From contig NC_047066.1 of assembly GCF_902459465.1 (NCBI RefSeq), positions 14,384,001 through 14,448,000 on the forward strand: 64,000 bases of DNA. The letters run 5' to 3'. Numbering within the stretch: the first letter of the stretch is position 1; the number at the start of each line of letters is the position of its first letter. The notes beneath the pieces are model-generated. The model did no database searches and was not told where the DNA came from. It was given only the letters and a program-made list of their open reading frames with translations. Position numbers and translations under genes: made by a program. Origin of the DNA: Asterias rubens (lineage: Eukaryota). Of the stretch, positions 1,079 to 42,635 are shown in pieces.

Positions 1079-3067
1079 ATGGCTGCCAGTATCACAGTCC
1101 ATTCAGTGCTTGATAAGATCAGTAAGGATCATCTAGAATGTCCAATATGCACCAATCGCTTCATCAATCCAACAATGCTAGACTGTCTACACAGCTTCTG
1201 CTTCACATGCCTCAAGGAGCTTCACCAACAAGATCCTAACAACTCCATCCTACTGTGTCCTCTGTGCAGAAAGAAAACAACACTAGAAGACAACAAGGTT
1301 GAAAGTCTACCTAAGGACTTTAAACTCAATGCCCTGGTGGATGAGTTTACTGTTCAGGAGCAACTCATGGAGGGTCATGGGTCAGAGGTCAAATGTCAAG
1401 CCTGTGAAAGAGATCATATGGCTGTTTCCAGATGTATTGACTGTGACAATTTTATTTGTCAAGAATGTCAACAGGCACATCAGCATTTTGCTATTTTGAA
1501 ATCACATCAAATCTATGCACTTGCTCAACTGCAATCAGGTGTAGTAACCTACCGCAGTAAGATCAGGGAGTACATTCCAAAGTGTGGCAAGCACAGTGAT
1601 CAGACTCTGAACATCTACTGCAACACATGCCAGAAGTTAGAATGCACAACATGTACTGTTCTTGATCATGGAAATCCAAAGCATGACCTTATTGGCATAC
1701 CTGAGGCTTTAGACAAATGCAAACAGGAAGTCGCAGAGCTGGTTGCAAAAGCTGAGAAGTGCAAGGTGGATATTCAAACTGCCATGGAACAAGCCAGTGA
1801 GTCTCGCAAGAAACTGGAATCTTCATATGCTGAAACCAATATGAAAATCTCCCAGAAGGCTGCCAAGGAGAGAGCAAAGATCACAGAAGAGGAAAAGCAG
1901 CTGAAGCAAGAGGCAGAGAGTGTTTACAAAGACAGAGTCCAGACATTTGAAACTGCAGAGGCAACCAATACAAAAGAAGTGACCCAGGTAGAGCACAAGC
2001 TGGGTGAAGTGAATCAGTTCATGACCCAAGCAAGCTCTCATGAGATTATGGATTTCAAGCTGAAACTTATAAACAATCTCGATGAACTAACTAAGAAACA
2101 AGGTGAGATTGTGTCTGACAGGTTTTCCTTTCTTGAGTTTGAAGAAGGTGAAAGGTCAGTGGGAAGACTGGTGCTGGAAGATGAGCAACAAGCTAAAGCA
2201 GAGGCTCAGGCCAAGGAACATGAAACAATCCATACAAAACAGGAGTGGAAACTGAAGGAAAGTGTTAGTAAAATTGGGAACACAATATTTAAGTTGGCGA
2301 AATCGGTTGCAGCTTTCTCCGACAATGAAATAGTAGTACTAGATACAACACACAATGCATTGTTTTCATTAAAACCTCAATTAGCAGCAGACAAATCACA
2401 ATCTACTCACTGCCTACAAAGATTAAAAGTCACAGGACTTACTAAACCAACAGCACTCACTGTGGACAATAATGATCACCTGTATGTGATTGACAATAGA
2501 GAAGTCAAGGTTTTTAACAGGAAATATATGCTCCATCATCAGTTCCAGCTAAGTGGGAGAAAGCTCTCCCCATCATGCCTTGCAGTGGATGAAAACAATC
2601 TCATAGCAGTGGGTTATTCACAAGGGCTAATCTCACTCTACAACCCTGATGGATCACTCATCAGAACATTCTCTACTCCAGTAAATGTAGAATATTGTAC
2701 TTTATACAATGAGAGGATTATCTTCAACAGTAGAACAGATGATCCAGATTTACACTTAGTTGATTATCAGGGTGGAAAGGTGTTCTCAGTAGATATTTTT
2801 CAGTCTGAAGAATCCTATGGTTTGTGCTGTGATAAAGATGGATGTATCTTTGTTGCTCAATTTAATGAGACAACAGAAAACAATAGAATATGGCAGTACA
2901 GTCCCGATGGCAAGTACATTGGATGTGTCATTGAGGATTGTGGTTATGCCTTTGACATCACATTCACACCATCTGGCAATCTTGTAGTGGCAGCAAAAAC
3001 ATCAGTAAACATCTTCCAAGTTGTTTCCCGGTACAGTAAGACCTCACATTGTAACATGCTAAAGTGA
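1079..3067 (+). CDS. TRIM-NHL-like E3 ubiquitin ligase, copy 1 (662 aa)
   Basis: C3HC4 RING CPIC..CLHSFCFTC..CPLC; B-box1 CQAC..CIDC..CQEC..H..H; B-box2 CGKH..CNTC..CTTC..H..H; coiled coil; C-terminal repeats such as PTALTVDNNDHLYVID, PSCLAVDENNLIAV and AFDITFTPSGNLVV, typical of NHL/beta-propeller blades. Confidence 0.93.
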   Translation: MAASITVHSVLDKISKDHLECPICTNRFINPTMLDCLHSFCFTCLKELHQQDPNNSILLCPLCRKKTTLEDNKVESLPKDFKLNALVDEFTVQEQLMEGHGSEVKCQACERDHMAVSRCIDCDNFICQECQQAHQHFAILKSHQIYALAQLQSGVVTYRSKIREYIPKCGKHSDQTLNIYCNTCQKLECTTCTVLDHGNPKHDLIGIPEALDKCKQEVAELVAKAEKCKVDIQTAMEQASESRKKLESSYAETNMKISQKAAKERAKITEEEKQLKQEAESVYKDRVQTFETAEATNTKEVTQVEHKLGEVNQFMTQASSHEIMDFKLKLINNLDELTKKQGEIVSDRFSFLEFEEGERSVGRLVLEDEQQAKAEAQAKEHETIHTKQEWKLKESVSKIGNTIFKLAKSVAAFSDNEIVVLDTTHNALFSLKPQLAADKSQSTHCLQRLKVTGLTKPTALTVDNNDHLYVIDNREVKVFNRKYMLHHQFQLSGRKLSPSCLAVDENNLIAVGYSQGLISLYNPDGSLIRTFSTPVNVEYCTLYNERIIFNSRTDDPDLHLVDYQGGKVFSVDIFQSEESYGLCCDKDGCIFVAQFNETTENNRIWQYSPDGKYIGCVIEDCGYAFDITFTPSGNLVVAAKTSVNIFQVVSRYSKTSHCNMLK

Positions 3068-4559
3068 ACACACCAAAGCAACTGAACCATTAATATCATA
3101 GCATGCACATTATGCTAGTTCATGTTGTAGCTTTGGTGTTACCAGTAGTGAACACTTTAGATTCATCAGAGAATCTGGACAATTAATTTTCTAATCCTGA
3201 ATACAACCTTGAAGAGCATCCACAATCTCAAATGTCCAGCCAAAGGCAAAGGAGGCAATATGGCATGATGTACATTACGTTGTTTCAAAACAAAAAGGTT
3301 GTAAATCTCCTAATTTACTGTTAACGTTAACCGCTTGCGAAAATGTTTTTACAAAATCAATGGAGGTTGAAGGAACACGTTGCCTTGGATCGGACGAGTT
3401 GGTCTATAAAAAGCGATTGTATCCGTTTGTTATAGAAATGCATATGGTTGGAAAGATGTTTTAAAAGTAGAATACAATGATCCACATAACTTTGCCTAGA
3501 AATCGCATGGTTTTGCTTTGCGAACTAACACGGTCAGCTATTTATGGGAGTCAACAAAATTTTGACTCCCATTAATGGCTGATGGTGTTAGTCGACGAAG
3601 TTTGTGTGGATCATTGTATTCTACCTTTACAACATCTTTCTACCCATGCATTTCATAACAAACCGTTACAAACGCTTTTCAAAGACCAACTCAACCGCTC
3701 AAAGGCAGCGTGTAAGATATTATGTTGTTCCACTTTTATGCCAGACAGAAATTTGTTGAGGAATCACGTTGAGATACAAGATGAACTGTAGAAATAAAAT
3801 CAATAACCAAAAATGACCTTGTTGCACCATGGTCGCACGGACACAAACAATTTCATCAGTGGACCATACTTCAAATACATGTAGCAAGAGTTATTGCTTC
3901 TTATTCATTTATTCACACTTTGCAGATATGTTCTTTTATATTACATCTCTTGCTTGTTCTGTTTTCTGGTTGGCTGAAACACGCTCACGTGCATGAGATT
4001 TACTCCACCAGGAACTAGACCCGCATTGAGACATCGTGTGCGTACGTTTTGCAGGAAATAGTTCCATGAGTGGGCAATAGACTTATAATTTTTGACTGGT
4101 TACAGCGCCCTCTCTTGACATGAACCATGGACTAGCATCTAAAAAACTGAATGTGGGGAAATTAATGCATTCCTTTTATTGCGGAATGGCCTTTGATTTA
4201 ATTGCCCATGTATTAATCAGGAATTAAAACAGTTTCGTAAGCCCTTGACAAGTTTTAGACCTAAGGTGTTATAAAACACGTATGAACTGGCATAAATCGG
4301 TAAATAGTGCAAATCCATCTCACCTTGGATGATTGACCAGAAGAGGAACCGTCTCAGGAACAAAGTCCCTCGTCTGGTCAGAGTCCCTTGGAGGAACAGG
4401 CAGTTTGCACTACATGTATTTACCTCATTGCCAGACATGTATAATAACACAATAAATGGCTTCTAATGCCCACACTTTATCTTAACAACACTGTATAATG
4501 TAAATCAACATGCATTAAATGGCACTGATGTTCAATAAGGTCACATTTATTCAAATTAA

Positions 4560-4880: not shown

Positions 4881-6449
4881 GTAATTTCTTTTTTTCTACA
4901 CTGTATGCCTGTTAATGGAAATCAAAAAATGTACTCGCTCACTGTTTAAATAAACTGATGATCATTGTTATTTTATTTTACTACTATAGTTTTTATATTT
5001 TCCATTTGCTTGTACAATAAATTAAGACTGAACACACTTCACCTCTATCATCTGCACTCACAGGCCTGTTTGTTTCGTTTTTGAAAGGGCAAGGGCACCA
5101 AGGCATTTTCTCCTTGGTAAAGGGAACCCGTCTCATCATTAGCCAGGAGAAATTTGAGGTCATGCACAGTGTGTACTTTGTATGTAAACAAAGCCTGGCT
5201 CTTACTTCCTGTGAATGCGAATGAGAAGCGACTTTTGACGACACAGGCTGTTTTCCCAGCGAATGTTTCGCAGGAGTTGAGCACAAATCAACTGACTCAA
5301 ATTATCCGTTGCGAATTCGTGACGTCAAAAATTGTATCGCATTCGCAGGAAGAATACTGTGAAACGGTTTGGAATAGTGCAAGCTGCGTACAGGTGCAGA
5401 AAGTTGTGCAGGTGGAAATGTAACGCATCACGGTGACGTGTGATAAGCGTGTCCATCCGTACCCCAATTAACACACCTGATGGAGGGCAAGGGGGGGGGG
5501 GGTCGCTTTGAGGCAATCTGCCACGTCTTAGGGCCTTGTCGTATGAGGCAACTTTAACAGGCAACTTGGAGGCAGCCAACAAAGGAGGGTGCACCAACTT
5601 AATAAACTCCCAAAGCGACCAATGCTAAAAGCGACCAATATTCAAAAATATTCACAAAATATATATAGTCTCTCAGACTCTTGAAAACATACATTTCCAG
5701 ACAACTAAGCTTTGTGATTTTTGATGGAAATGATGCTGAGTTCCCTTGATGGGAAGATTATCTAAGCAAACTAAACAACAAACAAACAAACAAACAAGTA
5801 AACAAGCCTACAAACAACAAACCCTTTTTATTTTACTATCACTATATCAGCAATATTCTAGACCACAAAACTGTATAATTACTACTGGACATAAAGTGTA
5901 CAATAAGTGCATAAATTCCTTGATTCTTTATTCTTGATGGCACCATGCAGCATGAGATCATTTGTATGTCACAATAAATGTTAAAATCGTTTTTTTTTGC
6001 AATATCTGACAACAGACGGCTTAAGAAAGATTTTGTTTGGTTTATAGTAATGTAACAACGCACAATGAGTTGTCAGTGGTCACTGATCCATTTAAACACT
6101 AAAGGAAACCCAACACAAACACACATTGTACTTTGTACACTCACTTGTAAAACAGTTGTCATGGTTATGGGCTACTATAAATACAGGCCTGGAATGTCAT
6201 CTTTGAGAGGGCAAGGCAGTTTTCATTTTGCAAAAGGCATTCCATTGAAAAGTTTACGGGTGAACCTACATGTATTGAAGAGGCACCAAGGCCAACAACA
6301 GAGGCAATACATACATGTATATAGATGCTACATTATGTATGGCCTCTGCAGCCTCCCTGGTGTATTTCAGGTCTGTGTATGTGTACACAATAGGTGTAAT
6401 TGTACTGTATACATGTAGAAAGTGACACTTGAAGGTGACATCATGGATC

Positions 6450-6696
6450 TATAAATAGAAAAGGGGATTTTTTTTTCCAGGGAGTGATGAGCAATATAAT
6501 GCCAACTTTACAGTGTACATGGTACTACACGTACAGACTATGCATCACAAAGCACAGGACCAGCACATACAAGGAACAGTGTAGAAGGGTGTGGATAAAA
6601 CACCTGACAGAAGTCACAGCTTTTGGGTGAAAACTGATGGAGAAAGACCTCCAACAACACCAAGAAATTGCTTGTAAACTGTATACAATCGTAAGT
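6450..6696 (+). promoter_or_regulatory. Putative TATA box, upstream exon and 5' splice donor of TRIM copy 2
   Basis: TATAAATA at 6450-6457 (also 19198, 33454, 39057). Donor AATC|GTAAGT at 6691 is conserved at 12178, 19434, 33660 and 39263. The transcription start is inferred, not observed. Confidence 0.6.
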
Positions 6697-8496: not shown

Positions 8497-8712
8497 TGCT
8501 GGTGTAGTGGCCATTTATTCAAAATTTCCAGATCCATTCATTTATCAATGCGTAAATTATGCACTAAATGTGTAAGAATACTGTATCTTGTGCAACAGTC
8601 ACCTGAAGTCATTTTGATAGTGATAAATACAACATCAGATAATATGAGTAGATTTAATACTAACAATGAACTGACCCTTTTGTATTAACAGGGAAAGATC
8701 GTAAAATCAAAG

Positions 8713-10647
8713 ATGGCTGCCAGTATCACAGTCCATTCAGTGCTTGATAAGATCAGTAAGGATCATCTAGAATGTCCAATATGCACCAATCGCTTCATCA
8801 ATCCAACAATGCTAGACTGTCTACACAGCTTCTGCTTCACATGCCTCAAGGAGCTTCACCAACAAGATCCTAACAACTCCATCCTACTGTGTCCTCTGTG
8901 CAGAAAGAAAACAACACTAGAAGACAACAAGGTTGAAAGTCTACCTAAGGACTTTAAACTCAATGCCCTGGTGGATGAGTTTACTGTTCAGGAGCAACTC
9001 ATGGAGGGTCATGGGTCAGAGGTCAAATGTCAAGCCTGTGAAAGGGATCATATGGCTGTTTCCAGATGTATTGACTGTGACAATTTTATTTGTCAAGAAT
9101 GTCAACAGGCACATCAGCATTTTGCTATTTTGAAATCACATCAAATCTATGCACTTGCTCAACTGCAATCAGGTGTAGTAACCTATCGCAGTAAGATCAG
9201 GGAGTACATTCCAAAGTGTGGCAAGCACAGTGATCAGACTCTGAACATCTACTGCAACACATGCCAGAAGTTAGAATGCACAACATGTACTGTTCTTGAT
9301 CATGGAAATCCAAAGCATGACCTTATTGGCATACCTGAGGCTTTAGACAAATGCAAACAGGAAGTCGCAGAGCTGGTTGCAAAAGCTGAGAAGTGCAAGG
9401 TGGATATTCAAACTGCCATGGAACAAGCCAGTGAGTCTCGCAAGAAACTGGAATCTTCATATGCTGAAACCAATATGAAAATCTCCCAGAAGGCTGCCAA
9501 GGAGAGAGCAAAGATCACTGAAGAGGAAAATCAGCTGAAGCAAGAGGCAGAGAGTGTTTACAAAGACAGAGTCCAGACATTTGAAACTGTAGAGGCAACC
9601 AACACAAAAGAAGTGACCCAGGTAGAGCACAAGCTGGGTGAAGTGAATCAGTTCATGACCCAAGCAAGCTCTCATGAGATTCTGGATTTCAAGCTGAAAC
9701 TTATAAACAATCTTGAGGAACTGACTAAGAATCAAGGTGAGATTGTGTCTGACAGGTTTTCCTTTCTTGAGTTTGAAGAAGGTGAAAGGTCAGTGGGAAG
9801 ACTGGTGCTGGAAGATAAGCAACAAGCTAAAGCAGAGGCTCAGGCCAAGGAACATGAAACAATCCATACAAAACAGGAGTGGAAACTGAAGGAAAGTGTT
9901 TTTAAGTGGGCGAATTCGGTTGCAGCTTTCTCCGACAATGAATTAGTAGTACAAGATACAACACACAATTCATTGTTTGCATTAAAACCTCAATTAGCAG
10001 CAGACAAATCACAATCTGCTCACTGCCCACAAAGATTAAAAGTCACAGGACTTACTAAACCAACAGCACTCACTGTGGACAATAATGATCACCTGTATGT
10101 GATTGAAGATCTAGAAGTCAAGGTTTTTAACAGGAAATATATGCTCCATCATCAGTTCCAGCTAAGTGAGAGAATGCTCTCCCCATCATGCCTTGCAGTG
10201 GATGAAAACAATCTCATAGCAGTGGGTTATTTACCAGGGCTAATCTCACTCTACAACCCTGATGGATCACTCATCAGAACATTCTCTACTCCAGTACAGG
10301 TAGACTATTTGACTTTATACAAGGAGAGGATTATCTACAGCAGTAGATATGATACACATTTACACTCAGTTGAATATAAGGGTGTAAAGGTGTTCTCAGT
10401 AGATACTGATCAGTCTGAAAAATCCTATGGTTTGTGCTGTGATAAAGATGGAAGTATCTTTGTTGCTCAATATAATGGGACAACAGAAAACAATAGAATA
10501 TGTCAGTACAGTCCTGATGGCAAGTACATTGGATGTGTCATTGAGGATTGTGGTAATGCCTATGACATCACATTCACACCATCTGGCAACCTTGTAGTAG
10601 CAGCATACACATCAGTAAAAATCTACCAAGTTGTTTCCCCAGTATAG
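8713..10647 (+). CDS. TRIM-NHL-like protein, copy 2 (644 aa)
   Basis: Same architecture. Has a 21-nt in-frame deletion at the start of the propeller and a short VVSPV* tail. Confidence 0.93.
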   Translation: MAASITVHSVLDKISKDHLECPICTNRFINPTMLDCLHSFCFTCLKELHQQDPNNSILLCPLCRKKTTLEDNKVESLPKDFKLNALVDEFTVQEQLMEGHGSEVKCQACERDHMAVSRCIDCDNFICQECQQAHQHFAILKSHQIYALAQLQSGVVTYRSKIREYIPKCGKHSDQTLNIYCNTCQKLECTTCTVLDHGNPKHDLIGIPEALDKCKQEVAELVAKAEKCKVDIQTAMEQASESRKKLESSYAETNMKISQKAAKERAKITEEENQLKQEAESVYKDRVQTFETVEATNTKEVTQVEHKLGEVNQFMTQASSHEILDFKLKLINNLEELTKNQGEIVSDRFSFLEFEEGERSVGRLVLEDKQQAKAEAQAKEHETIHTKQEWKLKESVFKWANSVAAFSDNELVVQDTTHNSLFALKPQLAADKSQSAHCPQRLKVTGLTKPTALTVDNNDHLYVIEDLEVKVFNRKYMLHHQFQLSERMLSPSCLAVDENNLIAVGYLPGLISLYNPDGSLIRTFSTPVQVDYLTLYKERIIYSSRYDTHLHSVEYKGVKVFSVDTDQSEKSYGLCCDKDGSIFVAQYNGTTENNRICQYSPDGKYIGCVIEDCGNAYDITFTPSGNLVVAAYTSVKIYQVVSPV

Positions 10648-14200: not shown

Positions 14201-16135
14201 ATGGCTGCCAGTATCACAGACCATTCAGTGCTTGATAAGATCAGTAAGGATCATCTAGAATGTCCAATATGCACCAATCGCTTCATCAATCCAACAATGC
14301 TAGACTGTCTACACAGCTTCTGCTTCACATGCCTCAAGGAGCTTCACCAACAAGATCCTAACAACTCCATCCTACTGTGTCCTCTGTGCAGAAAGAAAAC
14401 AACACTAGAAGACAACAAGGTTGAAAGTCTACCTAAGGACTTTAAACTCAATGCCCTGGTGGATGAGTTTACTGTTCAGGAGCAACTCATGGAGGGTCAT
14501 GGGTCAGAGGTCAAATGTCAAGCCTGTGAAAGGGATCATATGGCTGTTTCCAGATGTATTGACTGTGACAATTTTATTTGTCAAGAATGTCAACAGGCAC
14601 ATCAGCATTTTGCTATTTTGAAATCACATCAAATCTATGCACTTGCTCAACTGCAATCAGGTGTAGTAACCTATCGCAGTAAGATCAGGGAGTACATTCC
14701 AAAGTGTGGCAAGCACAGTGATCAGACTCTGAACATCTACTGCAACACATGCCAGAAGTTAGAATGCACAACATGTACTGTTCTTGATCATGGAAATCCA
14801 AAGCATGACCTTATTGGCATACCTGAGGCTTTAGACAAATGCAAACAGGAAGTCGCAGAGCTGGTTGCAAAAGCTGAGAAGTGCAAGGTGGATATTCAAA
14901 CTGCCATGGAACAAGCCAGTGAGTCTCGCAAGAAACTGGAATCTTCATATGCTGAAACCAATATGAAAATCTCCCAGAAGGCTGCCAAGGAGAGAGCAAA
15001 GATCACTGAAGAGGAAAATCAGCTGAAGCAAGAGGCAGAGAGTGTTTACAAAGACAGAGTCCAGACATTTGAAACTGTAGAGGCAACCAACACAAAAGAA
15101 GTGACCCAGGTAGAGCACAAGCTGGGTGAAGTGAATCAGTTCATGACCCAAGCAAGCTCTCATGAGATTCTGGATTTCAAGCTGAAACTTATAAACAATC
15201 TTGAGGAACTGACTAAGAATCAAGGTGAGATTGTGTCTGACAGGTTTTCCTTTCTTGAGTTTGAAGAAGGTGAAAGGTCAGTGGGAAGACTGGTGCTGGA
15301 AGATAAGCAACAAGCTAAAGCAGAGGCTCAGGCCAAGGAACATGAAACAATCCATACAAAACAGGAGTGGAAACTGAAGGAAAGTGTTTTTAAGTGGGCG
15401 AATTCGGTTGCAGCTTTCTCCGACAATGAATTAGTAGTACAAGATACAACACACAATTCATTGTTTGCATTAAAACCTCAATTAGCAGCAGACAAATCAC
15501 AATCTGCTCACTGCCCACAAAGATTAAAAGTCACAGGACTTACTAAACCAACAGCACTCACTGTGGACAATAATGATCACCTGTATGTGATTGAAGATCT
15601 AGAAGTCAAGGTTTTTAACAGGAAATATATGCTCCATCATCAGTTCCAGCTAAGTGAGAGAATGCTCTCCCCATCATGCCTTGCAGTGGATGAAAACAAT
15701 CTCATAGCAGTGGGTTATTTACCAGGGCTAATCTCACTCTACAACCCTGATGGATCACTCATCAGAACATTCTCTACTCCAGTACAGGTAGACTATTTGA
15801 CTTTATACAAGGAGAGGATTATCTACAGCAGTAGATATGATACACATTTACACTCAGTTGAATATAAGGGTGTAAAGGTGTTCTCAGTAGATACTGATCA
15901 GTCTGAAAAATCCTATGGTTTGTGCTGTGATAAAGATGGAAGTATCTTTGTTGCTCAATATAATGGGACAACAGAAAACAATAGAATATGTCAGTACAGT
16001 CCTGATGGCAAGTACATTGGATGTGTCATTGAGGATTGTGGTAATGCCTATGACATCACATTCACACCATCTGGCAACCTTGTAGTAGCAGCATACACAT
16101 CAGTAAAAATCTACCAAGTTGTTTCCCCAGTATAG
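14201..16135 (+). CDS. TRIM-NHL-like protein, copy 3 (644 aa)
   Basis: Protein identical to copy 2 except V7D (t8732 vs a14220). Part of a 5,488-bp tandem duplication. Confidence 0.88.
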   Translation: MAASITDHSVLDKISKDHLECPICTNRFINPTMLDCLHSFCFTCLKELHQQDPNNSILLCPLCRKKTTLEDNKVESLPKDFKLNALVDEFTVQEQLMEGHGSEVKCQACERDHMAVSRCIDCDNFICQECQQAHQHFAILKSHQIYALAQLQSGVVTYRSKIREYIPKCGKHSDQTLNIYCNTCQKLECTTCTVLDHGNPKHDLIGIPEALDKCKQEVAELVAKAEKCKVDIQTAMEQASESRKKLESSYAETNMKISQKAAKERAKITEEENQLKQEAESVYKDRVQTFETVEATNTKEVTQVEHKLGEVNQFMTQASSHEILDFKLKLINNLEELTKNQGEIVSDRFSFLEFEEGERSVGRLVLEDKQQAKAEAQAKEHETIHTKQEWKLKESVFKWANSVAAFSDNELVVQDTTHNSLFALKPQLAADKSQSAHCPQRLKVTGLTKPTALTVDNNDHLYVIEDLEVKVFNRKYMLHHQFQLSERMLSPSCLAVDENNLIAVGYLPGLISLYNPDGSLIRTFSTPVQVDYLTLYKERIIYSSRYDTHLHSVEYKGVKVFSVDTDQSEKSYGLCCDKDGSIFVAQYNGTTENNRICQYSPDGKYIGCVIEDCGNAYDITFTPSGNLVVAAYTSVKIYQVVSPV

Positions 16136-21032: not shown

Positions 21033-23024
21033 ATGGCTGCCAGTACCACAGTCCATTCAGTGCTTGATAAGATCAGTAAGGATCATCTAGAATGTCCAAT
21101 ATGCACCAATCGCTTCATCAACCCAACAATGCTAGACTGTCTACACAGCTTCTGCTTCACATGCCTCAAGGAGCTTCACCAACAAGATCCTAACAACTCC
21201 ATCCTACTGTGTCCTCTGTGCAGAAAGAAAACAACACTAGAAGACAACAAGGTTGAAAGTCTACCTAAGGACTTTAAACTCAATGCCCTGGTGGATGAGT
21301 TTACTGTTCAGGAGCAACTCATGGAGGGTCATGGGTCAGAGGTCAAATGTCAAGCTTGTGAAAGAGATCATATGGCTGTTTCCAGATGTATTGACTGTGA
21401 CAATTTTATTTGTCAAGAATGTCAACAGGCACATCAGCATTTTGCTATTTTGAAATCACATCAAATCTATGCACTTGCTCAACTGCAATCAGGTGTAGTA
21501 ACCTATCGCAGTAAGATCAGGGAGTACATTCCAAAGTGTGGCAAGCACAGTGATCAGACTCTGAACATCTACTGCAACACATGCCAGAAGTTAGAATGCA
21601 CAACATGTACTGTTCTTGATCATGGAAATCCAAAGCATGACCTTATTGGCATACCTGAGGCTTTAGACAAATGCAAACAGGAAGTCGCAGAGCTGGTTGC
21701 AAAAGCTGAGAAGTGCAAGGTGGATATTCAAACTGCCATGGAACAAGCCAGTGAGTCTCGCAAGAAACTGGAATCTTCATATGCTGAAACCAATATGAAA
21801 ATCTCCCAGAAGGCTGCCAAGGAGAGAGCAAAGATCACAGAAGAGGAAAAGCAGCTGAAGCAAGAGGCAGAGAGTGTTTACAAAGACAGAGTCCAGACAT
21901 TTGAAACTGCAGAGGCAACCAATACAAAAGAAGTGACCCAGGTAGAGCACAAGCTGGGTGAAGTGAATCAGTTCATGACCCAAGCAAGCTCTCATGAGAT
22001 TATGGATTTCAAGCTGAAACTTATAAACAATCTCGATGAACTAACTAAGAAACAAGGTGAGATTGTGTCTGACAGGTTTTCCTTTCTTGAGTTTGAAGAA
22101 GGTGAAAGGTCAGTGGGAAGACTGGTGCTGGAAGATGAGCAACAAGCTAAAGCAGAGGCTCAGGCCAAGGAACATGAAACAATCCATACAAAACAAAAGT
22201 GGAAACTGAAAGAAAGTTTCAGTCAACTTGGCTTCACACAATTTGCTATGAAAAGGTTTGTTGCAGCTTTCTCCGACAGTGAAATAGTAGTATTACATGT
22301 AGATATAGACCACAATTCATTGTTTGCATTGAAACCTCAAGTAGCAGCAGACACATCCCAGTCTACTCACTGCCCACAAAGATTAAAACTAAAAGGTCTT
22401 TCTGAACCATCAGCACTCACTGTGGACAATAATGATCACCTGTATGTAATTGACAATCTAGAAGTCAAGGTCTTTAACAGGAAATATATGCTCATTCATC
22501 AGTTTCAACTAAGTGAGAGAAAGTTCTCCCCATCATGCCTTGCAGTGGATGAAAACAATCTCATAGCAGTGGGTTATTCACAAGGGCTAATCTCACTCTA
22601 CAACCCTGATGGATCACTCATCAGAACATTCTCTACTCCAGTAAAGGTATACTATTTGACTTTATACAATGAGAGGATTATCAACAGTAGTACAGATGAT
22701 CGACATTTACACTTAGTTGATTATCAGGGTGGAAAGGTGTTCTCAGTAGATATTGATCAGTCTGAAGAATCCTTTGGTTTGTGCTGTGATAAAGATGGAT
22801 GTATCTTTGTTGCTCAATATAATGAGACAACACATAACAATAGAATAAGTCAGTACAGTCCCGATGGCAAGTACATTGGATGTGTCATTGAGGATTGTGG
22901 TGATGCCTATGACATCACATTCACACCATCTGGCAATCTTGTAGTGGCAGCAAAAACATCAGTAAACATCTTCCAAGTTGTTTCCCGGTACAGTAAGACC
23001 TCACATTGTAACATGCTAAAGTGA
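21033..23024 (+). CDS. TRIM-NHL-like protein, copy 4 (663 aa)
   Basis: RING/B-box/coiled-coil part essentially identical to copy 1; first propeller blades are distinct (FSQLGFTQFAMKRF). Confidence 0.93.
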   Translation: MAASTTVHSVLDKISKDHLECPICTNRFINPTMLDCLHSFCFTCLKELHQQDPNNSILLCPLCRKKTTLEDNKVESLPKDFKLNALVDEFTVQEQLMEGHGSEVKCQACERDHMAVSRCIDCDNFICQECQQAHQHFAILKSHQIYALAQLQSGVVTYRSKIREYIPKCGKHSDQTLNIYCNTCQKLECTTCTVLDHGNPKHDLIGIPEALDKCKQEVAELVAKAEKCKVDIQTAMEQASESRKKLESSYAETNMKISQKAAKERAKITEEEKQLKQEAESVYKDRVQTFETAEATNTKEVTQVEHKLGEVNQFMTQASSHEIMDFKLKLINNLDELTKKQGEIVSDRFSFLEFEEGERSVGRLVLEDEQQAKAEAQAKEHETIHTKQKWKLKESFSQLGFTQFAMKRFVAAFSDSEIVVLHVDIDHNSLFALKPQVAADTSQSTHCPQRLKLKGLSEPSALTVDNNDHLYVIDNLEVKVFNRKYMLIHQFQLSERKFSPSCLAVDENNLIAVGYSQGLISLYNPDGSLIRTFSTPVKVYYLTLYNERIINSSTDDRHLHLVDYQGGKVFSVDIDQSEESFGLCCDKDGCIFVAQYNETTHNNRISQYSPDGKYIGCVIEDCGDAYDITFTPSGNLVVAAKTSVNIFQVVSRYSKTSHCNMLK

Positions 23025-27481: not shown

Positions 27482-29440
27482 ATGGCTGCCAGTATCACAG
27501 TCACTTCAGTGCTTGATAAGATCAGTAAGGATCATCTAGAATGTCCAATATGCACCAATCGCTTCATCAATCCAACAATGCTAGACTGTCTACACGGCTT
27601 CTGCTTCACATGCCTCAAGGAGCTTCACCAACAAGATCCTAACAACTCCATCCTACTGTGTCCTCTGTGCAGAAAGAAAACAACACTAGAAGACAACAAG
27701 GTTGAAAGTCTACCTAAGGACTTTAAACTCAATGCCCTGGTGGATGAGTTTACTGTTCAGGAGCAACTCATGGAGGGTCATGGGTCAGAGGTCAAATGTC
27801 AAGCCTGTGAAAGAGATCATATGGCTGTTTCCAGATGTATTGACTGTGACAATTTTATTTGTCAAGAATGTCAACAGGCACATCAGCATTTTGCTATTTT
27901 GAAATCACATCAAATCTATGCACTTGCTCAACTGCAATCAGGTGTAGTAACCTATCGCAGTAAGATCAGGGAGTACATTCCAAAGTGTGGCAAGCACAGT
28001 GATCAGACTCTGAACATCTACTGCAACACATGCCAGAAGTTAGAATGCACAACATGTACTGTTCTTGATCATGGAAATCCAAAGCATGACCTTATTGGCA
28101 TACCTGAGGCTTTAGACCAATGCAAACAGGAAGTCGCAGAGCTGGTTGCAAAAGCTGAGAAGTGCAAGGTGGATATTCAAACTGCCATGGAACAAGCCAG
28201 TGAGTCTCGCAAGAAACTGGAATCTTCATATGCTGAAACCAATATGAAAATCTCCCAGAAGGCTGCCAAGGAGAGAGCAAAGATCACAGAAGAGGAAAAG
28301 CAGCTGAAGCAAGAGGCAGAGAGTGTTTACAAAGACAGAGTCCAGACATTTGAAACTGCAGAGGCAACCAATACAAAAGAAGTGACCCAGGTAGAGCACA
28401 AGCTGGGTGAAGTGAATCAGTTCATGACCCAAGCAAGCTCTCATGAGATTATGGATTTCAAGCTGAAACTTACAAACAATCTCGATGAACTAACTAAGAA
28501 ACAAGGTGAGATTGTGTCTGACAGGTTTTCCTTTCTTGAGTTTGAAGAAGGTGAAAGGTCAGTGGGAAGACTGGTGCTGGAAGATGAGCAACAAGCTAAA
28601 GCAGAGGCTCAGGCCAAGGAACATGAAACAATCCATACAAAACAGGAGTGGAAACTGAAGGAAAGTGTTAGTAAAATTGGGAACACAATATTTAAGTGGG
28701 CGAAATCGGTTGCAGCTTTCTCCGACAATGAAATAGTAGTACTAGATACAACACACAATGCATTGTTTTCATTAAAACCTCAATTAGCAGCAGACAAATC
28801 ACAATCTACTCACTGCCTACAAAGATTAAAAGTCACAGGACTTACTAAACCAACAGCACTCACTGTGGACAATAATGATCACCTGTATGTGGTTGACAAT
28901 AGAGAAGTCAAGGTTTTTAACAGGAAATATATGCTCCATCATCAGTTCCAGCTAAGTGGGAGAAAGCTCTCCCCATCATGCCTTGCAGTGGATGAAAACA
29001 ATCTCATAGCAGTGGGTTATTCACAAGGGCTAATCTCACTCTACAACCCTGATGGATCACTCATCAGAACATTCTCTACTCCAGTAAAGGTAGACTATTT
29101 GACTTTATACAATGAGAGGATTATCTTCAACAGTAGTACAGATGATCCAGATTTACACTTAGTTGATTATCAGGGTGGAAAGGTGTTCTCAGTAGATATT
29201 GATCAGTCTGAAGGATCCTTTGGTTTGTGCTGTGGTAAAGATGGAAGTATCTTTGTTGCTCAATATAATGGGACAACACAAAACAATAGAATATGTCAGT
29301 ACAGTCCTGATGGCAAGTACATTGGATGTGTCATTGAGGATTGTGGTAATGCCTATGACATCACATTCACACCATCTGGCAACCTTGTAGTAGCAGCATA
29401 CACATCAGTAAAAATCTACCAAGTTGTTTCCCCAGTATAG
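27482..29440 (+). CDS. TRIM-NHL-like protein, copy 5 (652 aa)
   Basis: Intact ORF. Copy-1-like propeller start and copy-2/3-like C-terminus. Confidence 0.9.
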   Translation: MAASITVTSVLDKISKDHLECPICTNRFINPTMLDCLHGFCFTCLKELHQQDPNNSILLCPLCRKKTTLEDNKVESLPKDFKLNALVDEFTVQEQLMEGHGSEVKCQACERDHMAVSRCIDCDNFICQECQQAHQHFAILKSHQIYALAQLQSGVVTYRSKIREYIPKCGKHSDQTLNIYCNTCQKLECTTCTVLDHGNPKHDLIGIPEALDQCKQEVAELVAKAEKCKVDIQTAMEQASESRKKLESSYAETNMKISQKAAKERAKITEEEKQLKQEAESVYKDRVQTFETAEATNTKEVTQVEHKLGEVNQFMTQASSHEIMDFKLKLTNNLDELTKKQGEIVSDRFSFLEFEEGERSVGRLVLEDEQQAKAEAQAKEHETIHTKQEWKLKESVSKIGNTIFKWAKSVAAFSDNEIVVLDTTHNALFSLKPQLAADKSQSTHCLQRLKVTGLTKPTALTVDNNDHLYVVDNREVKVFNRKYMLHHQFQLSGRKLSPSCLAVDENNLIAVGYSQGLISLYNPDGSLIRTFSTPVKVDYLTLYNERIIFNSSTDDPDLHLVDYQGGKVFSVDIDQSEGSFGLCCGKDGSIFVAQYNGTTQNNRICQYSPDGKYIGCVIEDCGNAYDITFTPSGNLVVAAYTSVKIYQVVSPV

Positions 29441-29490
29441 TAAGACTTCACCTTGTAACATGCTAAAGTGAACGAACCAAAACAACTAAA

Positions 29491-34049: not shown

Positions 34050-36059
34050 ATGTCAAAAATGGCTGCCAGTATCACAGTCACTTCAGTGCTTGATAAGATC
34101 AGTAAGGATCATCTAGAATGTCCAATATGCACCAATCGCTTCATCAATCCAACAATGCTAAACTGTCTACACAGCTTCTGCTTCACATGCCTCAAGGAGC
34201 TTCACCAACAAGATCCTAACAACTCCATCCTACTGTGTCCTCTGTGCAGAAAGAAAACAACACTAGAAGACAACAAGGTTGATAGTCTACCTAAGGACTT
34301 TAAACTCAATGCCCTGGTGGATGAGTTTACTGTTCAGGAGCAACTCATGGAGGGTCATGGGTCAGAGGTCAAATGTCAAGCCTGTGAACATGGTGAACGA
34401 GATCATACCGCTGTTTCTAGATGTATTGACTGTGAACATTTTCTTTGTCAAGATTGTCAACAAGCACATCAGCAATTGGCTATTTTGAAATCACATAAAA
34501 TCTACACATTTGCTCAACTGCAATCAGGTGTAGTAACCTACCGCAGTAAAATCAGGGAGTACATTCCAAAGTGTGGCAAGCACAGTGATCAGACTCTGAA
34601 CATCTACTGCAACACATGCCAGAAGTTAGAATGCACAACATGTAGGCCTACTGTTCTTGATCATGGAAATCCAAAACATGACCTTATTGGCATACCTGAG
34701 GCTTTAGACAAATGCAAACAGGAAGTCGCAGAGCTGGTTGCAAAAGCTGAGAAGTGCAAGGTGGATATTCAAACTGCCATGGAACAAGCCAGTGAGTCTC
34801 GCAAGAAACTGGAATCTTCATATGCTGAAACCAATAAGAAAATCTCCAAGAAGGCTGCCAAGGAGAGAGCAAAGATCACCAAAGAGGAAAAGCAGCTGAT
34901 GCAAGAGGCAGAGAGTGTTTACAAAGACAGAGTCCAGACATTTGAAACTGCAGAGGCAACCAACACAAAAGAAGTGACCCAGGTAGAGCACAAGCTGGAT
35001 GAAGTTAATCAGTTCATGACCCAAGCAAGCTCTCATGAGATTCTGGATTTCAAGCTGAAACTTATAAACAATCTTGATGAACTTACTAAGAAACAAGGTG
35101 AGATTGTGTCTGACAGGCTTTCCTTTCTTGAGTTTGAAGAAGGTGAAAGGTCAGTGGGAAGACTGGTGCTGGAAGATGATCAACAAGCTAAAGCAGAGGC
35201 TCAGGCCAAGGAACATGAAACAATCCATACAAAACAAGAGTGGAATCTGAAGGAAAGTTACAGTCAATTTGGCTTCACAAAGTTGAAAAATGCAAGGTCT
35301 GTTACAGCTTTCTCAGATAATGAATTAGTAGTATTAGATACAACACACAAAGCACTGTTTGCATTAAAACCCCAAGTAGCAGCAAACAAATCACAATCTA
35401 CTCACTGCTCACAAAGATTAAATGTCAAAGGTCTTACTAAACCAACAGCACTCACTGTGGACAATAATGATCACCTGTATGTGATTGATGATCTAGAAGT
35501 CAAGGTTTTTAACAGGAAATATATGCCCCTCTATCAGTTCCAAGTAAGTGTAAGAAACTTCTCCCCATCATGCCTTGCAGTGGATGAAAACAATCTCATA
35601 GCAGTGGGTTATTCACAATGGCGGCAGATCTCACTCTACAACCCTTATGGATCACGAATCAGAACATTCTGTACTCCAGCAAATGTAGACTATTTGACTT
35701 CATACAAGGAGAGGATTATCTACAGCAGTCGAATTGATAAACAGTTACACTCAGTTGATTATAAGGGTGGAAAGGTGTTCTCAGTAGATACTGATCAGTC
35801 TGAAATATCCTTTGGTGTGTGCTGTGATAAAGATGGTAGTATCTTTGTTGCTCAATTCCATAGAGGAGCCAGGAGAATATGTCAGTACAGTCCTGATGGC
35901 AAGTACATTGGATGTGTCATTGAGGCTTGTGGTTATGCCTATGACATCACATTCACACCATCTGGCAATATTGTAGTAGCAGCAGACCAATCAGTAAACA
36001 TCTTCAAAGTTGTTTCCCGGTACAACAGTAAGACCTCACCTTGTAACATGCTAAAGTGA
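34050..36059 (+). CDS. TRIM-NHL-like protein, copy 6 (669 aa; start could be 34059)
   Basis: Most divergent copy. In-frame insertions in both B-boxes; propeller loops GYSQWRQ and QFHRGARR. Confidence 0.93.
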   Translation: MSKMAASITVTSVLDKISKDHLECPICTNRFINPTMLNCLHSFCFTCLKELHQQDPNNSILLCPLCRKKTTLEDNKVDSLPKDFKLNALVDEFTVQEQLMEGHGSEVKCQACEHGERDHTAVSRCIDCEHFLCQDCQQAHQQLAILKSHKIYTFAQLQSGVVTYRSKIREYIPKCGKHSDQTLNIYCNTCQKLECTTCRPTVLDHGNPKHDLIGIPEALDKCKQEVAELVAKAEKCKVDIQTAMEQASESRKKLESSYAETNKKISKKAAKERAKITKEEKQLMQEAESVYKDRVQTFETAEATNTKEVTQVEHKLDEVNQFMTQASSHEILDFKLKLINNLDELTKKQGEIVSDRLSFLEFEEGERSVGRLVLEDDQQAKAEAQAKEHETIHTKQEWNLKESYSQFGFTKLKNARSVTAFSDNELVVLDTTHKALFALKPQVAANKSQSTHCSQRLNVKGLTKPTALTVDNNDHLYVIDDLEVKVFNRKYMPLYQFQVSVRNFSPSCLAVDENNLIAVGYSQWRQISLYNPYGSRIRTFCTPANVDYLTSYKERIIYSSRIDKQLHSVDYKGGKVFSVDTDQSEISFGVCCDKDGSIFVAQFHRGARRICQYSPDGKYIGCVIEACGYAYDITFTPSGNIVVAADQSVNIFKVVSRYNSKTSPCNMLK

Positions 36060-40640: not shown

Positions 40641-42635
40641 ATGTCAAAGATGGCTGCCAGTATCACAGTCACTTCAGTGCTTGATAAGATCAGTAAGGAT
40701 CATCTAGAATGTCCAATATGCACCAATCGCTTCATCAATCCAACAATGCTAGACTGTCTACACAGCTTCTGCTTCACATGCCTCAAGGAGCTTCACCAAC
40801 AAGATCCTAAAAACTCCATCCTACTGTGTCCTCTGTGCAGAAAGAAAACAACACTAGAAGACAACAAGGTTGACAGTCTACCTCAGGACTTTAAACTCAA
40901 TGCCCTGGTGGATGAGTTTACTGTTCAGGAGCAACTCATGGAGGGTCATGGGTCAGAGGTCAAATGTCAAGCCTGTGAAAGAGATCATACGGCTGTTTCC
41001 AGATGTATTGACTGTGACAATTTTATTTGCCAAGAATGTCAACAAGCACATCAGCATTTTGCTACCTTGAAATCACATAAGATCTACTCACTTGCTCAAC
41101 TGCAATCAGGTGTAGTAACTTACCGCAGTAAAATCAGGGAATACATTCCAAAGTGTGGCAAGCACAGTGATCAGACTCTCAACATCTACTGCAACACATG
41201 CCAGAAGTTAGAATGCACAACATGTACTGTTCTTGATCATGGAAATCCAAAACATGACCTTATTGGTATACCTGAGGCTTTAGACAAATGCAAACAGGAA
41301 GTCGCAGAGCTGGTTGCAATCGCTGAGAGTTGCAAGGCTGATATTCAAACTGCCATGGAACAAGCCAGTGAGTCTCGCAAGAAACTGGAATCTTCATATG
41401 CTGAAACCAATATGAAAATCTCCCAGAAGGCTGCCAAGGAGAGAGCAAAGATCACCGAAGAGGAAAAGCAGCTGAAGCAAGAGGCAGAGAGTGTTTACAA
41501 AGACAGAGTCCAGACATTTGAAACTGCAGAGGCAACCAACACAAAAGAAGTGACCCAGGTAGAGCACAAGCTGGATGAAGTGAATCAGTTCATGACCCAA
41601 GCAAGCTCTCACGAGATTATGGATTTCAAACTGAAACTTATAAACAATCTTGATGAACTAACTAAGAAACAAGGTGAGATTGTGTCTGACAGGCTTTCCT
41701 TTCTTGAGTTTGAAGAAGGTGAAAGGTCAGTGGGAAGACTGGTGCTGGAAGATGATCAACAAGCTAAAGCAGAGGCTCAGGCCAAGGAACATGAAACAAT
41801 CCATACAAAACAGGAGTGGAAACTGAAGGAAAGTGTTAGTAAAATTGGGAACACAATATTTAAGTGGGCGAAATCGGTTGCAGCTTTCTCCGACAATGAA
41901 ATAGTAGTACTAGATACAACACACAATGCATTGTTTTCATTAAAACCTCAATTAGCAGCAGACAAATCACAATCTACTCACTGCCTACAAAGATTAAAAG
42001 TCACAGGACTTACTAAACCAACAGCACTCACTGTGGACAATAATGATCACCTGTATGTGATTGACAAAAGAGAAGTCAAGGTTTTTAACAGGAAATATAT
42101 GCCCCTCTATCAGTTCCAACTAAGTGTAAGAGACTTCTCCCCATCATGCCTTGCAGTGGATGAAAACAATCTCATAGCAGTGGGTTATAAAGAAGGGCAG
42201 AAGATCTCACTCTACAACCCTGATGGATCACTCAGCAGAACATTCTCTACTAAAGTAAATGTACACTATTTGACTTCATACAAGGAGAGGATTATCTACA
42301 GCAGTAGAGGTGATACACATTTACACTCAGTTGATTATAAGGGTGGAAAGGTGTTCTCAGGAGATACTGATCAGTCTGAATCATCCTATGGTGTGTGCTG
42401 TGATAAAGATGGAAGTATCTTTGTTGCTCAATATAATAGGACAACACAAAACAATAGAATATGTCAGTACAGTCCTGATGGCATTGGATGTGTCATTGAG
42501 GATTGTGGTAACGCCTATGACATCACATTCACACCATCAGGCAATCTTGTAGTGGCAGCAAAAACATCAGTAAACATCTTCCAAGTTGTTTCCCGGTACA
42601 ACAGTAAGACCTCACCTTGGAACATGCTAAAGTGA
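40641..42635 (+). CDS. TRIM-NHL-like protein, copy 7 (664 aa; start could be 40650)
   Basis: Intact ORF with a mosaic propeller and a 2-aa deletion (SPDG--IGCV). Confidence 0.93.
   Translation: MSKMAASITVTSVLDKISKDHLECPICTNRFINPTMLDCLHSFCFTCLKELHQQDPKNSILLCPLCRKKTTLEDNKVDSLPQDFKLNALVDEFTVQEQLMEGHGSEVKCQACERDHTAVSRCIDCDNFICQECQQAHQHFATLKSHKIYSLAQLQSGVVTYRSKIREYIPKCGKHSDQTLNIYCNTCQKLECTTCTVLDHGNPKHDLIGIPEALDKCKQEVAELVAIAESCKADIQTAMEQASESRKKLESSYAETNMKISQKAAKERAKITEEEKQLKQEAESVYKDRVQTFETAEATNTKEVTQVEHKLDEVNQFMTQASSHEIMDFKLKLINNLDELTKKQGEIVSDRLSFLEFEEGERSVGRLVLEDDQQAKAEAQAKEHETIHTKQEWKLKESVSKIGNTIFKWAKSVAAFSDNEIVVLDTTHNALFSLKPQLAADKSQSTHCLQRLKVTGLTKPTALTVDNNDHLYVIDKREVKVFNRKYMPLYQFQLSVRDFSPSCLAVDENNLIAVGYKEGQKISLYNPDGSLSRTFSTKVNVHYLTSYKERIIYSSRGDTHLHSVDYKGGKVFSGDTDQSESSYGVCCDKDGSIFVAQYNRTTQNNRICQYSPDGIGCVIEDCGNAYDITFTPSGNLVVAAKTSVNIFQVVSRYNSKTSPWNMLK

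What the first reader, a model, noticed from the sequence alone, without database searches (positions are those of the whole stretch)
1079..42635. Seven intact TRIM genes with a constant RING/B-box/coiled-coil module and a hypervariable beta-propeller: candidate diversified recognition (innate immune) system
Seen: copies 1 and 4 differ by 1 aa over the first ~385 residues (about four nucleotide changes found by eye) but at roughly 40 positions or indels over the last ~280. Variation clusters at the same short loops in all copies (order 1, 2/3, 4, 5, 6, 7): DNRE/EDLE/DNLE/DNRE/DDLE/DKRE; YSQGL/YLPGL/YSQGL/YSQGL/YSQWRQ/YKEGQK; VNVEYC/VQVDYL/VKVYYL/VKVDYL/ANVDYL/VNVHYL; SRTDDPD/SRYDTH/STDDRH/STDDPD/SRIDKQ/SRGDTH; EESY/EKSY/EESF/EGSF/EISF/ESSY; GYAF/GNAY/GDAY/GNAY/GYAY/GNAY; AKT/AYT/AKT/AYT/ADQ/AKT. 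The blade cores between these loops stay fixed and no copy is pseudogenised. Established: NHL propellers of Brat/LIN-41-type proteins bind ligand or RNA through loops on the top face, and variable loops on a constant TRIM scaffold are how TRIM5 and fish finTRIMs (PRY-SPRY) diversify against viruses. Inference: this is an analogous repertoire built on an NHL propeller, coupling variable recognition to one ubiquitin-ligase effector.
Basis: partly seen in the sequence, partly recalled or inferred. Interest (0 to 1): 0.88.

Follow-up and report, generated by a model that had tools for sequence, protein, structure and literature searches.

The report
Starfish TRIM-NHL ligases with diversifying propellers
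Seven neighbouring starfish genes encode ubiquitin ligases with a conserved enzyme part and a binding surface that selection keeps changing, as in vertebrate antiviral TRIM proteins but on a different binding domain; an immune role is likely but untested.

Summary
The window is Asterias rubens chromosome LR699096.1. It holds seven intact single-exon genes for RING/B-box1/B-box2/coiled-coil/NHL-propeller proteins of 644-669 aa. They belong to a cluster of about 140-200 kb that A. amurensis shares.

- **dN/dS by structural class:** loops of the b-c/d-a ("top") face give 2.0 (bootstrap CI 1.2-3.3). Bottom loops give 0.34, strands 0.66 and the RBCC part 0.35.
- **Codon site models:** M1a/M2a 2dlnL is 195, with 12% of sites at omega about 7. 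The signal survives splitting the propeller into three segments with their own trees.
- **Location of selected sites:** of 21 selected sites, 15 lie in top loops and none in bottom loops.

Nuances:
- The "constant" N-terminal module is constant only locally. It is homogenised and swapped between paralogues; trees are discordant and the PHI test is significant.
- Elsewhere in the cluster there are decayed copies.
- g2 and g3 are 99.85% identical and could be an assembly duplicate.
- RNA reads show low expression of the family and of a g6-like propeller. Coverage of g1 is not gene-specific.

The immune function remains an inference. First-stage notes record similar clusters on other pieces of this genome. 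I rate it a new variant of a known kind, interest about 0.6.

The parts
1079..3067 (+). g1: TRIM-NHL gene, 662 aa. RING 21-63, B-box1 about 106-145, B-box2 167-205, coiled-coil helix 207-317, NHL propeller residues about 388-651 (nt 2240-3031), 11-aa tail.
   Evidence: ORF; Pfam; AF2 propeller model; full-length model; NHL fold.
8713..10647 (+). g2: TRIM-NHL gene, 644 aa; propeller from about nt 9874. It lacks 7 residues in the 6d-1a loop and has the short 'PV' C-terminus.
14201..16135 (+). g3: near-identical twin of g2, with 1 aa difference. The whole 5.48-kb unit 12043-17521 is 99.85% identical to 6556-12033.
21033..23024 (+). g4: TRIM-NHL gene, 663 aa; propeller from about nt 22194. The RBCC part is nearly identical to g1. 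Blades 1-2 resemble copies lying outside the window (L1b, L4c).
27482..29440 (+). g5: TRIM-NHL gene, 652 aa; propeller from about nt 28643. It is a chimera: g1-like up to about codon 500, and g2-like from about codon 600 into the 3' flank.
34050..36059 (+). g6: TRIM-NHL gene, 669 aa; propeller from about nt 35235. It is the most divergent copy. Its propeller is orthologous to A. amurensis L002 4812-6797. RNA reads cover the CDS and the 3' UTR at 95% likeness.
40641..42635 (+). g7: TRIM-NHL gene, 664 aa; propeller from about nt 41811.
2240..3031 (+). g1 propeller with 21 codons inferred under positive selection (NEB at least 0.95), in g1 residues: 405-408, 424, 474, 486, 495, 514, 517, 536, 553, 554, 556, 578, 597, 598, 625, 640, 641, 651. 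Every blade contributes.

Best explanation
**Shown.** The window holds part of a starfish-specific, tandemly duplicated family of RING E3 ligases of TRIM architecture. It evolves by birth-and-death plus frequent exchange of segments between paralogues.
- The catalytic and scaffold half (RING, two B-boxes, long coiled coil) is kept by purifying selection and homogenised locally.
- On the C-terminal six-bladed NHL propeller, the loops of one face (b-c and d-a, the canonical ligand-binding top face) are driven and kept apart by diversifying selection.
- The blade cores and the opposite face are conserved.

**Inferred.** Each paralogue presents a different binding surface on the same ubiquitin-ligase chassis. 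The cluster would then be a repertoire of substrate receptors for fast-changing ligands. Pathogen (viral) proteins or nucleic acids are the most likely targets, which would be ubiquitinated or used to trigger signalling, as with TRIM5alpha and fish finTRIMs. Segment shuffling adds combinatorial variety.
For: **Architecture.**

**dN/dS by structural class, defined from the model rather than from variability.**
- Top loops 2.01 in the window and 1.70 across 15 sequences, with bootstrap P(omega<=1) about 0.003.
- Bottom loops 0.34-0.46, strands 0.66-0.71, RBCC 0.31-0.35.

**Pairwise whole-propeller counts.**
- g2 versus g5: Sd 0.5, Nd 33.5, Fisher P 1.6e-4.
- g1 versus g2: omega 2.9, P 0.008.

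**Codon maximum likelihood.**
- Propeller M0 omega is 1.15.
- M1a/M2a 2dlnL is 194.8, with 11.7% of sites at omega 7.3. M7/M8 gives 212 and M8a/M8 gives 194.
- Three segments with their own trees give 47.7, 54.0 and 90.9. The RBCC control gives only 12.6.
- Of the 21 selected sites, 15 are in top loops and 0 in bottom loops, odds ratio 12, P 3e-7.

**Wider family.** The same top-versus-bottom contrast holds in 20 Patiria miniata paralogues (entropy 1.74 versus 1.17 bits, P 6e-5).

**Recombination.** Domain trees conflict with 99-100% bootstrap support, the PHI test gives 0 of 1000 permutations, and chimeras are explicit.

**Age and synteny.** The g6 propeller has an ortholog in A. amurensis, and the cluster is syntenic between the two species.

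**Transcription.**

**Precedent.** Top-face binding in Brat: PMC4015489. Fish TRIM multigene sets under positive selection: PMC3137616.
Against: - No functional or expression-under-challenge data, so the immune role rests on analogy.
- RNA depth is low, the tissues are unknown, and g1's propeller was essentially uncovered at 98% likeness.
- Recombination inflates site-model tests. The recombining RBCC control also reached LRT 12.6. My maximum-likelihood code fixes relative branch lengths and uses NEB rather than BEB.
- Homogenisation of synonymous sites by gene conversion may inflate omega in close pairs.
- 'Top face' is assigned from strand topology, not from model coordinates.
- The neighbouring genes (malectin, sugar transporter) give no immune context.
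Confidence: 0.55

Rival explanations
1. Diversifying selection is real, but the opponents are internal. The propellers would track selfish genetic elements (transposon RNAs or proteins) or other intragenomic or germline conflicts, in the way KRAB zinc fingers track transposons. Canonical TRIM-NHL proteins act on RNA, and C. elegans NHL-2 acts in small-RNA pathways.
For: - NHL top faces bind RNA sequence-specifically in Brat (PMC4015489).
- NHL-2 is a cofactor of germline small-RNA pathways (PMC6351104; title and abstract listed).
- The selection signature is the same as for the best explanation and does not name the opponent.
- The tissues of the RNA runs are unknown.
Against: - Top-loop net charge is mostly neutral to negative (-9 to +5). 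The electropositive top face is said to distinguish RNA-binding TRIM-NHL proteins.
- There is no evidence of germline-restricted expression.
Confidence: 0.2
2. The paralogues have diverged to serve different endogenous substrates or partners (sub- or neo-functionalisation of a housekeeping ligase family). There would be bursts of adaptive change after each duplication but no ongoing arms race.
For: - omega>1 is strongest in the closest pairs, which fits post-duplication bursts.
- The g6 propeller is kept as an ortholog in A. amurensis, with omega about 1.0 between species.
Against: - The same roughly 20 positions are hit again and again in many lineages and in both species, with up to 9 residues at one site.
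- The same face is hypervariable in a distant starfish.
- Segments are continually reshuffled.
- These are features of repertoire families rather than of stable division of labour.
Confidence: 0.15
3. There is no adaptive meaning. The propeller is simply under relaxed constraint, and gene conversion keeps the N-terminal half alike.
For: - Whole-propeller omega is close to 1 (median 1.0; M0 1.15).
- Gene conversion is demonstrably active.
- Decayed copies exist in the wider cluster.
Against: - omega is strongly heterogeneous: 0.34-0.7 in bottom loops and strands versus 1.7-2.0 in top loops.
- M2a and M8 are favoured over their nearly neutral null models, M1a and M8a (M8a has an omega = 1 class), by about 195 log-likelihood-ratio units.
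- All seven ORFs are intact and the blade cores are invariant.
- Synonymous divergence of the N-terminal half equals that of the propeller across the cluster.
Confidence: 0.05
4. Part of the array is an assembly artefact: haplotypes or a falsely duplicated unit laid in tandem.
For: g2 and g3 units differ at 8 positions in 5.48 kb and abut directly. That is less divergence than I would expect between alleles in such an outbreeding marine invertebrate (my own expectation, not measured here).
Against: - The other units differ by 2-13%, with different flanks and insertions.
- A syntenic multi-copy cluster exists in an independent assembly of A. amurensis.
- At most one of the seven copies would be affected.
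Confidence: 0.05

Closest known systems
TRIM5alpha/TRIM22 of primates and the fish multigene TRIM sets finTRIM (ftr), bloodthirsty-like (btr) and trim35-like (hltr)
   Same: - RBCC E3-ligase chassis.
- Lineage-specific tandem multigene clusters.
- Positive selection concentrated in surface loops of the C-terminal recognition domain.
- Recombination among copies.

The fish work (PMC3137616) used the same tests as here: M1a/M2a, M7/M8 and partitioning for recombination.
   Different: - The recognition domain here is a six-bladed NHL beta-propeller, not B30.2/PRY-SPRY.
- The host is an echinoderm.
- The coding region is a single exon.
- No antiviral or inducible function is shown.

Sardiello et al. 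(PMC2533329) described the fast-evolving TRIM group as SPRY-bearing and absent from invertebrates, and the NHL-bearing group as conserved.
Canonical TRIM-NHL proteins (Brat, Mei-P26, LIN-41/TRIM71, TRIM2, TRIM3, TRIM32/Thin, NHL-2)
   Same: - Homologous NHL propeller: Foldseek TM 0.73-0.78 and profile E-values 1e-47 to 1e-22.
- RBCC in front of the propeller.
- The ligand-binding top face is made of b-c and d-a loops.
   Different: - Only 13-19% identity.
- No filamin/Ig domain.
- Not a conserved single-copy developmental regulator but a young multigene family.
- The top face is not consistently electropositive.
- omega>1 rather than strong conservation.
Mammalian TRIM56
   Same: By Foldseek against AlphaFold/Swiss-Prot, its C-terminal region is an NHL-like propeller matching this one (TM 0.74). 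Several starfish relatives are auto-annotated 'TRIM56-like'. From my own knowledge, not tested here: TRIM56 lacks a filamin domain and is an interferon-inducible antiviral ligase.
   Different: TRIM56 is a single-copy gene. I know of no diversified repertoire of it. Orthology was not tested, and identity is about 17%.
RBCC/B-box-NHL protein clusters of molluscs and brachiopods in the ESM Atlas
   Same: The nearest language-model and structure neighbours of this propeller are many clusters of mollusc and brachiopod proteins. They are about 550-670 aa (one is 900 aa), carry B-box and/or RING together with NHL, and have 50-600 members each. This suggests comparable expansions in other marine invertebrates.
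   Different: This is a lead only: there is no alignment, and no test of selection or of tandem arrangement. Relatedness to the starfish family is not shown.

Membership tests
TRIM / RBCC E3 ligases | N-terminal C3HC4 RING with all eight zinc ligands | tested here: met
   Pfam zf-C3HC4 at residues 21-63. C21, C24, C36, H38, C41, C44, C60 and C63 are invariant in all seven copies and in 54 family members.
TRIM / RBCC E3 ligases | One or two B-box zinc fingers after the RING | tested here: met
   ANCHR-like B-box at 106-145 and zf-B_box at 167-205. Their Cys/His ligands are invariant.
TRIM / RBCC E3 ligases | Long coiled coil after B-box 2 | tested here: met
   The full-length AF2 model has one continuous helix over residues 207-317 at pLDDT 88-92. 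Antiparallel dimerisation was not tested.
TRIM-NHL (class VII: Brat, LIN-41/TRIM71, TRIM2/3/32) | C-terminal six-bladed NHL beta-propeller | tested here: met
   - 24 strands forming 6 blades, pLDDT 89.3, pTM 0.88.
- Top PDB folds are TRIM2, Brat, Thin, Mei-P26, TRIM3 and TRIM71 NHL domains.
- Profile hit to TRIM2 NHL at E 1.3e-47.
TRIM-NHL (class VII: Brat, LIN-41/TRIM71, TRIM2/3/32) | Filamin/Ig domain between coiled coil and NHL (present in TRIM2, TRIM3 and TRIM71, but not in all members) | tested here: not met
   No filamin Pfam hit. In the model only short helices and a hairpin lie between residues 318 and 388.
TRIM-NHL (class VII: Brat, LIN-41/TRIM71, TRIM2/3/32) | Electropositive top surface (RNA-binding hallmark according to PMC4015489) | tested here: inconclusive
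   Net charge of top-loop residues ranges from -9 to +5 among 16 copies, and most are negative. This is a residue count, not a surface-potential calculation.
Positively selected multigene TRIMs (TRIM5-like, finTRIM/btr/hltr) | B30.2 (PRY-SPRY) recognition domain | tested here: not met
   No SPRY or PRY hit; the C-terminal domain is NHL.
Positively selected multigene TRIMs (TRIM5-like, finTRIM/btr/hltr) | Lineage-specific tandem multigene cluster | tested here: met
   - Seven copies in 42 kb.
- More copies on the same chromosome, and a syntenic cluster in A. amurensis.
- Close relatives were found only in starfish.
Positively selected multigene TRIMs (TRIM5-like, finTRIM/btr/hltr) | Positive selection focused on ligand-binding loops of the C-terminal domain | tested here: met
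   - Top-loop omega 1.7-2.0.
- Site-model LRTs 195-212, robust to segmentation.
- 15 of 21 selected sites lie in top loops.
Positively selected multigene TRIMs (TRIM5-like, finTRIM/btr/hltr) | Induction by infection, or demonstrated restriction of a pathogen | not testable with these tools
   Only baseline RNA runs of unknown tissue could be laid.

The most novel reading that the evidence does not exclude
Starfish, and perhaps many marine invertebrates with large RBCC-NHL expansions, would use the NHL propeller as the variable recognition module of an intracellular innate-immune receptor or restriction-factor repertoire. Variety would come from positive selection on the top-face loops and from shuffling of blades and of whole propellers between paralogues. 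This would be an invertebrate counterpart, evolved independently, of the vertebrate B30.2 TRIM system.
Probability: 0.4. Interest if true: 0.8.

Novelty: new variant of a known kind. Interest (0 to 1): 0.62.

Why it matters
Fast-evolving, pathogen-facing TRIM families have so far been tied to the B30.2/SPRY domain and to vertebrates. NHL-bearing TRIMs have been treated as conserved developmental RNA regulators (PMC2533329, PMC4015489).

This cluster shows the same evolutionary syndrome built on an NHL propeller in an echinoderm:
- tandem expansion;
- a conserved ligase chassis;
- omega well above 1 on the binding face;
- module shuffling.

It gives a defined set of about 20 surface positions and six natural propeller variants to test for ligands. 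It also offers candidate resistance loci for diseases of sea stars. If the mollusc and brachiopod expansions behave alike, a large class of 'hypothetical' invertebrate genes would gain a working hypothesis.

Tried and rejected
- **Splice junction at 1068.** I first read the loose end at window 1068 in RNA contigs as a splice junction to a shared leader exon. Its 30-nt consensus has no match in the window. The sequence at 1040-1080 suggests instead an acceptor near 1057 plus an 8-nt insertion variant from a paralogue or allele. The 5' exon was not located, and the idea of one shared promoter is untested.
- **Reads on g1.** Laying reads on g1 at 98% likeness could not separate g1 from paralogues with the same N-terminal half. 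It left the propeller almost uncovered, so per-gene expression is unresolved.
- **Busy tool.** The look-up of sequencing runs was busy twice.
- **Literature.** Nine literature searches found no description of a starfish or other invertebrate TRIM-NHL repertoire under positive selection. The library lacks most subscription journals, so absence is weak evidence.
- **Relaxed constraint** was considered and rejected (see rivals).
- **RNA as the generic ligand** was considered, and marked down because of the top-loop charges.
- **Not done:** No PAML or HyPhy was available, so the codon models were my own code with fixed relative branch lengths.


Full report
**What is there.** The window holds seven + strand ORFs of 644-669 aa at the coordinates given. 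tblastn with g1 finds no other fragment. Each ORF has a C3HC4 RING, two B-boxes and weak NHL/SGL hits. All zinc ligands are invariant. The same proteins are on record from Asterias rubens chromosome LR699096.1 (assembly GCA_902459465.3). Relatives at 81-88% identity lie on the same chromosome and in A. amurensis, and relatives at 40-57% identity occur in Patiria miniata and Acanthaster planci. Beyond starfish the hits drop to about 25% identity over the RBCC part only. Fetched loci show that the cluster runs from a sugar-transporter gene to a malectin gene in both Asterias species, with single-exon copies every 5.5-9 kb.

**Checking the observation.**
- g1 and g4 differ by 1 aa and 4 nt in 385 codons, then by 43 aa and 3 indel columns.
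- The repeat is a whole-unit segmental duplication that includes the flanks.
- g2 and g3 are one unit copied, with 8 differences in 5.48 kb.

**What the C-terminal domain is.** An AF2 model of g1 residues 382-662, built on 57 family sequences, has pLDDT 89.3 and pTM 0.88 with 24 strands, which makes six four-stranded blades.
- The best solved folds are the NHL domains of TRIM2, Brat, Thin, Mei-P26, TRIM3 and TRIM71, at TM 0.73-0.78 and 13-19% identity.
- A family profile hits TRIM2 NHL at E 1.3e-47.
- Among reviewed proteins, TRIM3, TRIM2, NCL-1, TRIM56, TRIM71 and TRIM32 lead.
- The full-length model shows a 111-residue helix (207-317) and no filamin domain.

**Where the variation sits.** I labelled residues by strand topology alone: a-b and c-d loops form one face, b-c and d-a loops the other. 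The second is the 'top' face that binds RNA in Brat (PMC4015489).
- Among 15 distinct sequences, sites carry 3.6 (b-c) and 2.7 (d-a) different residues, against 1.5 in a-b and c-d loops and 1.65 in strands.
- In 20 Patiria paralogues the top loops are also more variable than the bottom loops (1.74 versus 1.17 bits, P 6e-5).

**Selection.** Nei-Gojobori estimates by these structural classes do not depend on having picked variable sites.

| Class | omega, window | omega, 15 sequences |
|---|---|---|
| Top loops | 2.01 (bootstrap CI 1.19-3.32; P(omega<=1) 0.0025) | 1.70 (bootstrap CI 1.13-2.44; P(omega<=1) 0.0035) |
| Bottom loops | 0.34 | 0.46 |
| Strands | 0.66 | 0.71 |
| RBCC | 0.35 | 0.31 |

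- Whole-propeller pairwise omega has a median of 1.0. It reaches 2.9 for g1-g2 (P 0.008) and 20 for g2-g5 (Sd 0.5, Nd 33.5, P 1.6e-4). RBCC omega has a median of 0.30.
- My own codon-model code (GY94, F3x4, relative branch lengths fixed from M0) gives a propeller M0 omega of 1.15.
- M1a/M2a 2dlnL is 194.8, with 11.7% of sites at omega 7.3. M7/M8 gives 212.3 and M8a/M8 gives 194.4.
- Because recombination inflates such tests, I split the propeller into three segments with their own trees. The LRTs were 47.7, 54.0 and 90.9. The equally recombining RBCC part gave 12.6, with M0 omega 0.38.
- Twenty-one sites have posterior probability of at least 0.95. Fifteen are in top loops and none in bottom loops. 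Of the six in strands, four sit at strand starts next to top loops. The odds ratio is 12, P 3e-7, and every blade contributes.

**Recombination and the 'constant' module.** Trees of the two halves conflict with 99-100% bootstrap support. PHI is significant in both halves, with 0 of 1000 permutations. Binned differences show plain chimeras:
- g5 is g1-like to about codon 500 and g2-like from about codon 600 into the 3' flank.
- g4 shares g1's RBCC part and tail but has foreign blades 1-2.
- L1a and L3b, about 100 kb apart, share a propeller (dS 0.006) on RBCC halves that differ by dS 0.21.
- B-box 1 occurs in two deeply diverged versions.

Across the cluster, RBCC dS (0.12) equals propeller dS (0.11-0.17). 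The N-terminal half is therefore not immutable. It is constrained at the protein level and locally homogenised. The g6 propeller has a clear A. amurensis ortholog, so some variants predate the species split. In the closest pairs there are very few synonymous differences next to many replacements. This fits gene conversion erasing neutral differences while selection keeps the loop differences, as happens in other repertoire families.

**Expression.** In two raw RNA-seq runs laid on g1, reads at 98% likeness cover the N-terminal half shared by the paralogues (depth 1-17) but hardly cover its propeller. In three raw RNA-seq runs at 95%, reads cover g6 through the propeller and 3' UTR. Combined depth is about 2-30 in two of the runs and lower in the third, and there are fixed differences that suggest alleles. 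The family is transcribed, but per-gene activity and tissue are unknown.

**Mechanism.**
- Shown: a conserved ligase chassis, a variable top face under diversifying selection, and module shuffling.
- Inferred: a repertoire of substrate receptors aimed at fast-changing ligands.
- Most likely ligand: pathogen components (my estimate about 0.5). Selfish elements and diverging endogenous partners are the live rivals.
- Top-loop net charge runs from -9 to +5. Generic RNA binding of the Brat type is therefore doubtful, and protein ligands are more likely.

**Comparison and novelty.** It works like TRIM5 and the fish ftr, btr and hltr sets (PMC3137616). It fails their defining B30.2 feature. It is a structural member of the TRIM-NHL group, but it lacks the filamin domain found in TRIM2, TRIM3 and TRIM71 and the group's conservation. 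PMC2533329 placed fast-evolving TRIMs in a SPRY group absent from invertebrates. ESM Atlas neighbours hint at similar expansions in molluscs and brachiopods. First-stage notes record similar clusters elsewhere in this genome. I found no paper describing this, so I rate it a new variant of a known kind.

Noticed in passing
window 6556-12033 and 12043-17521: Two directly abutting 5.48-kb units, each carrying one TRIM gene (g2, g3), differ at only 8 positions. This is either a very recent tandem duplication or a falsely duplicated stretch of the assembly.
   Followed up: partly
window 3371-3713, 11004-11371, 16492-16859, 23328-23676, 30766-31125, 36381-36744, 42921-43284: Each unit carries an imperfect palindrome of about 350 bp roughly 300 bp downstream of the stop codon. 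RNA runs cover it at depths hundreds to thousands of times above the genes, with many opposite-strand joints. It looks like a very abundant MITE-like repeat of the genome.
   Followed up: partly
window 5028-5224 and 37540-37736: A second short repeat in the intergenic spacers, also with very high depth in RNA runs and many loose ends.
   Followed up: no
codons 100-200 of the TRIM genes (for example L001 10001-11953 versus L003 17492-19453; g6 at window 34350-34650): B-box 1 occurs in two deeply diverged versions, with 40-45 nt differences in 50 codons. These are shuffled independently of the propeller. g6 has 3-aa and 2-aa insertions next to its B-boxes.
   Followed up: partly
3' ends of the seven genes (for example window 3029-3067, 10636-10647): Three alternative C-terminal tails: an 11-12 aa tail ending in NMLK (g1, g4, g6, g7), 'PV' (g2, g3, g5), and 'Q' or 'QLE/QEE' in copies outside the window. 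In the cases checked (g5, g4) the tail goes with the neighbouring 3' segment, which marks recombination breakpoints near the stop codon.
   Followed up: partly
L001 19111-21070 (A. rubens); L005 793-2040 and L006 19698-20945 (A. amurensis): Decayed family members outside the window. One copy is split over two frames. Other copies are 415 aa long and end after the coiled coil, so they lack a propeller. The public gene model for P0004 joins two neighbouring copies.
   Followed up: partly
L002 1-21977 (A. amurensis); window about 44000-64000: In A. amurensis the annotated malectin gene, on the opposite strand, spans at least three TRIM genes, so the end of the cluster may lie inside a malectin intron.
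   Followed up: no
window 1040-1080: A pyrimidine tract followed by AG near 1057, 22 nt before the start codon, together with RNA contigs that diverge upstream of it. This suggests a 5' UTR intron. The leader exon was not found in the window.
   Followed up: partly
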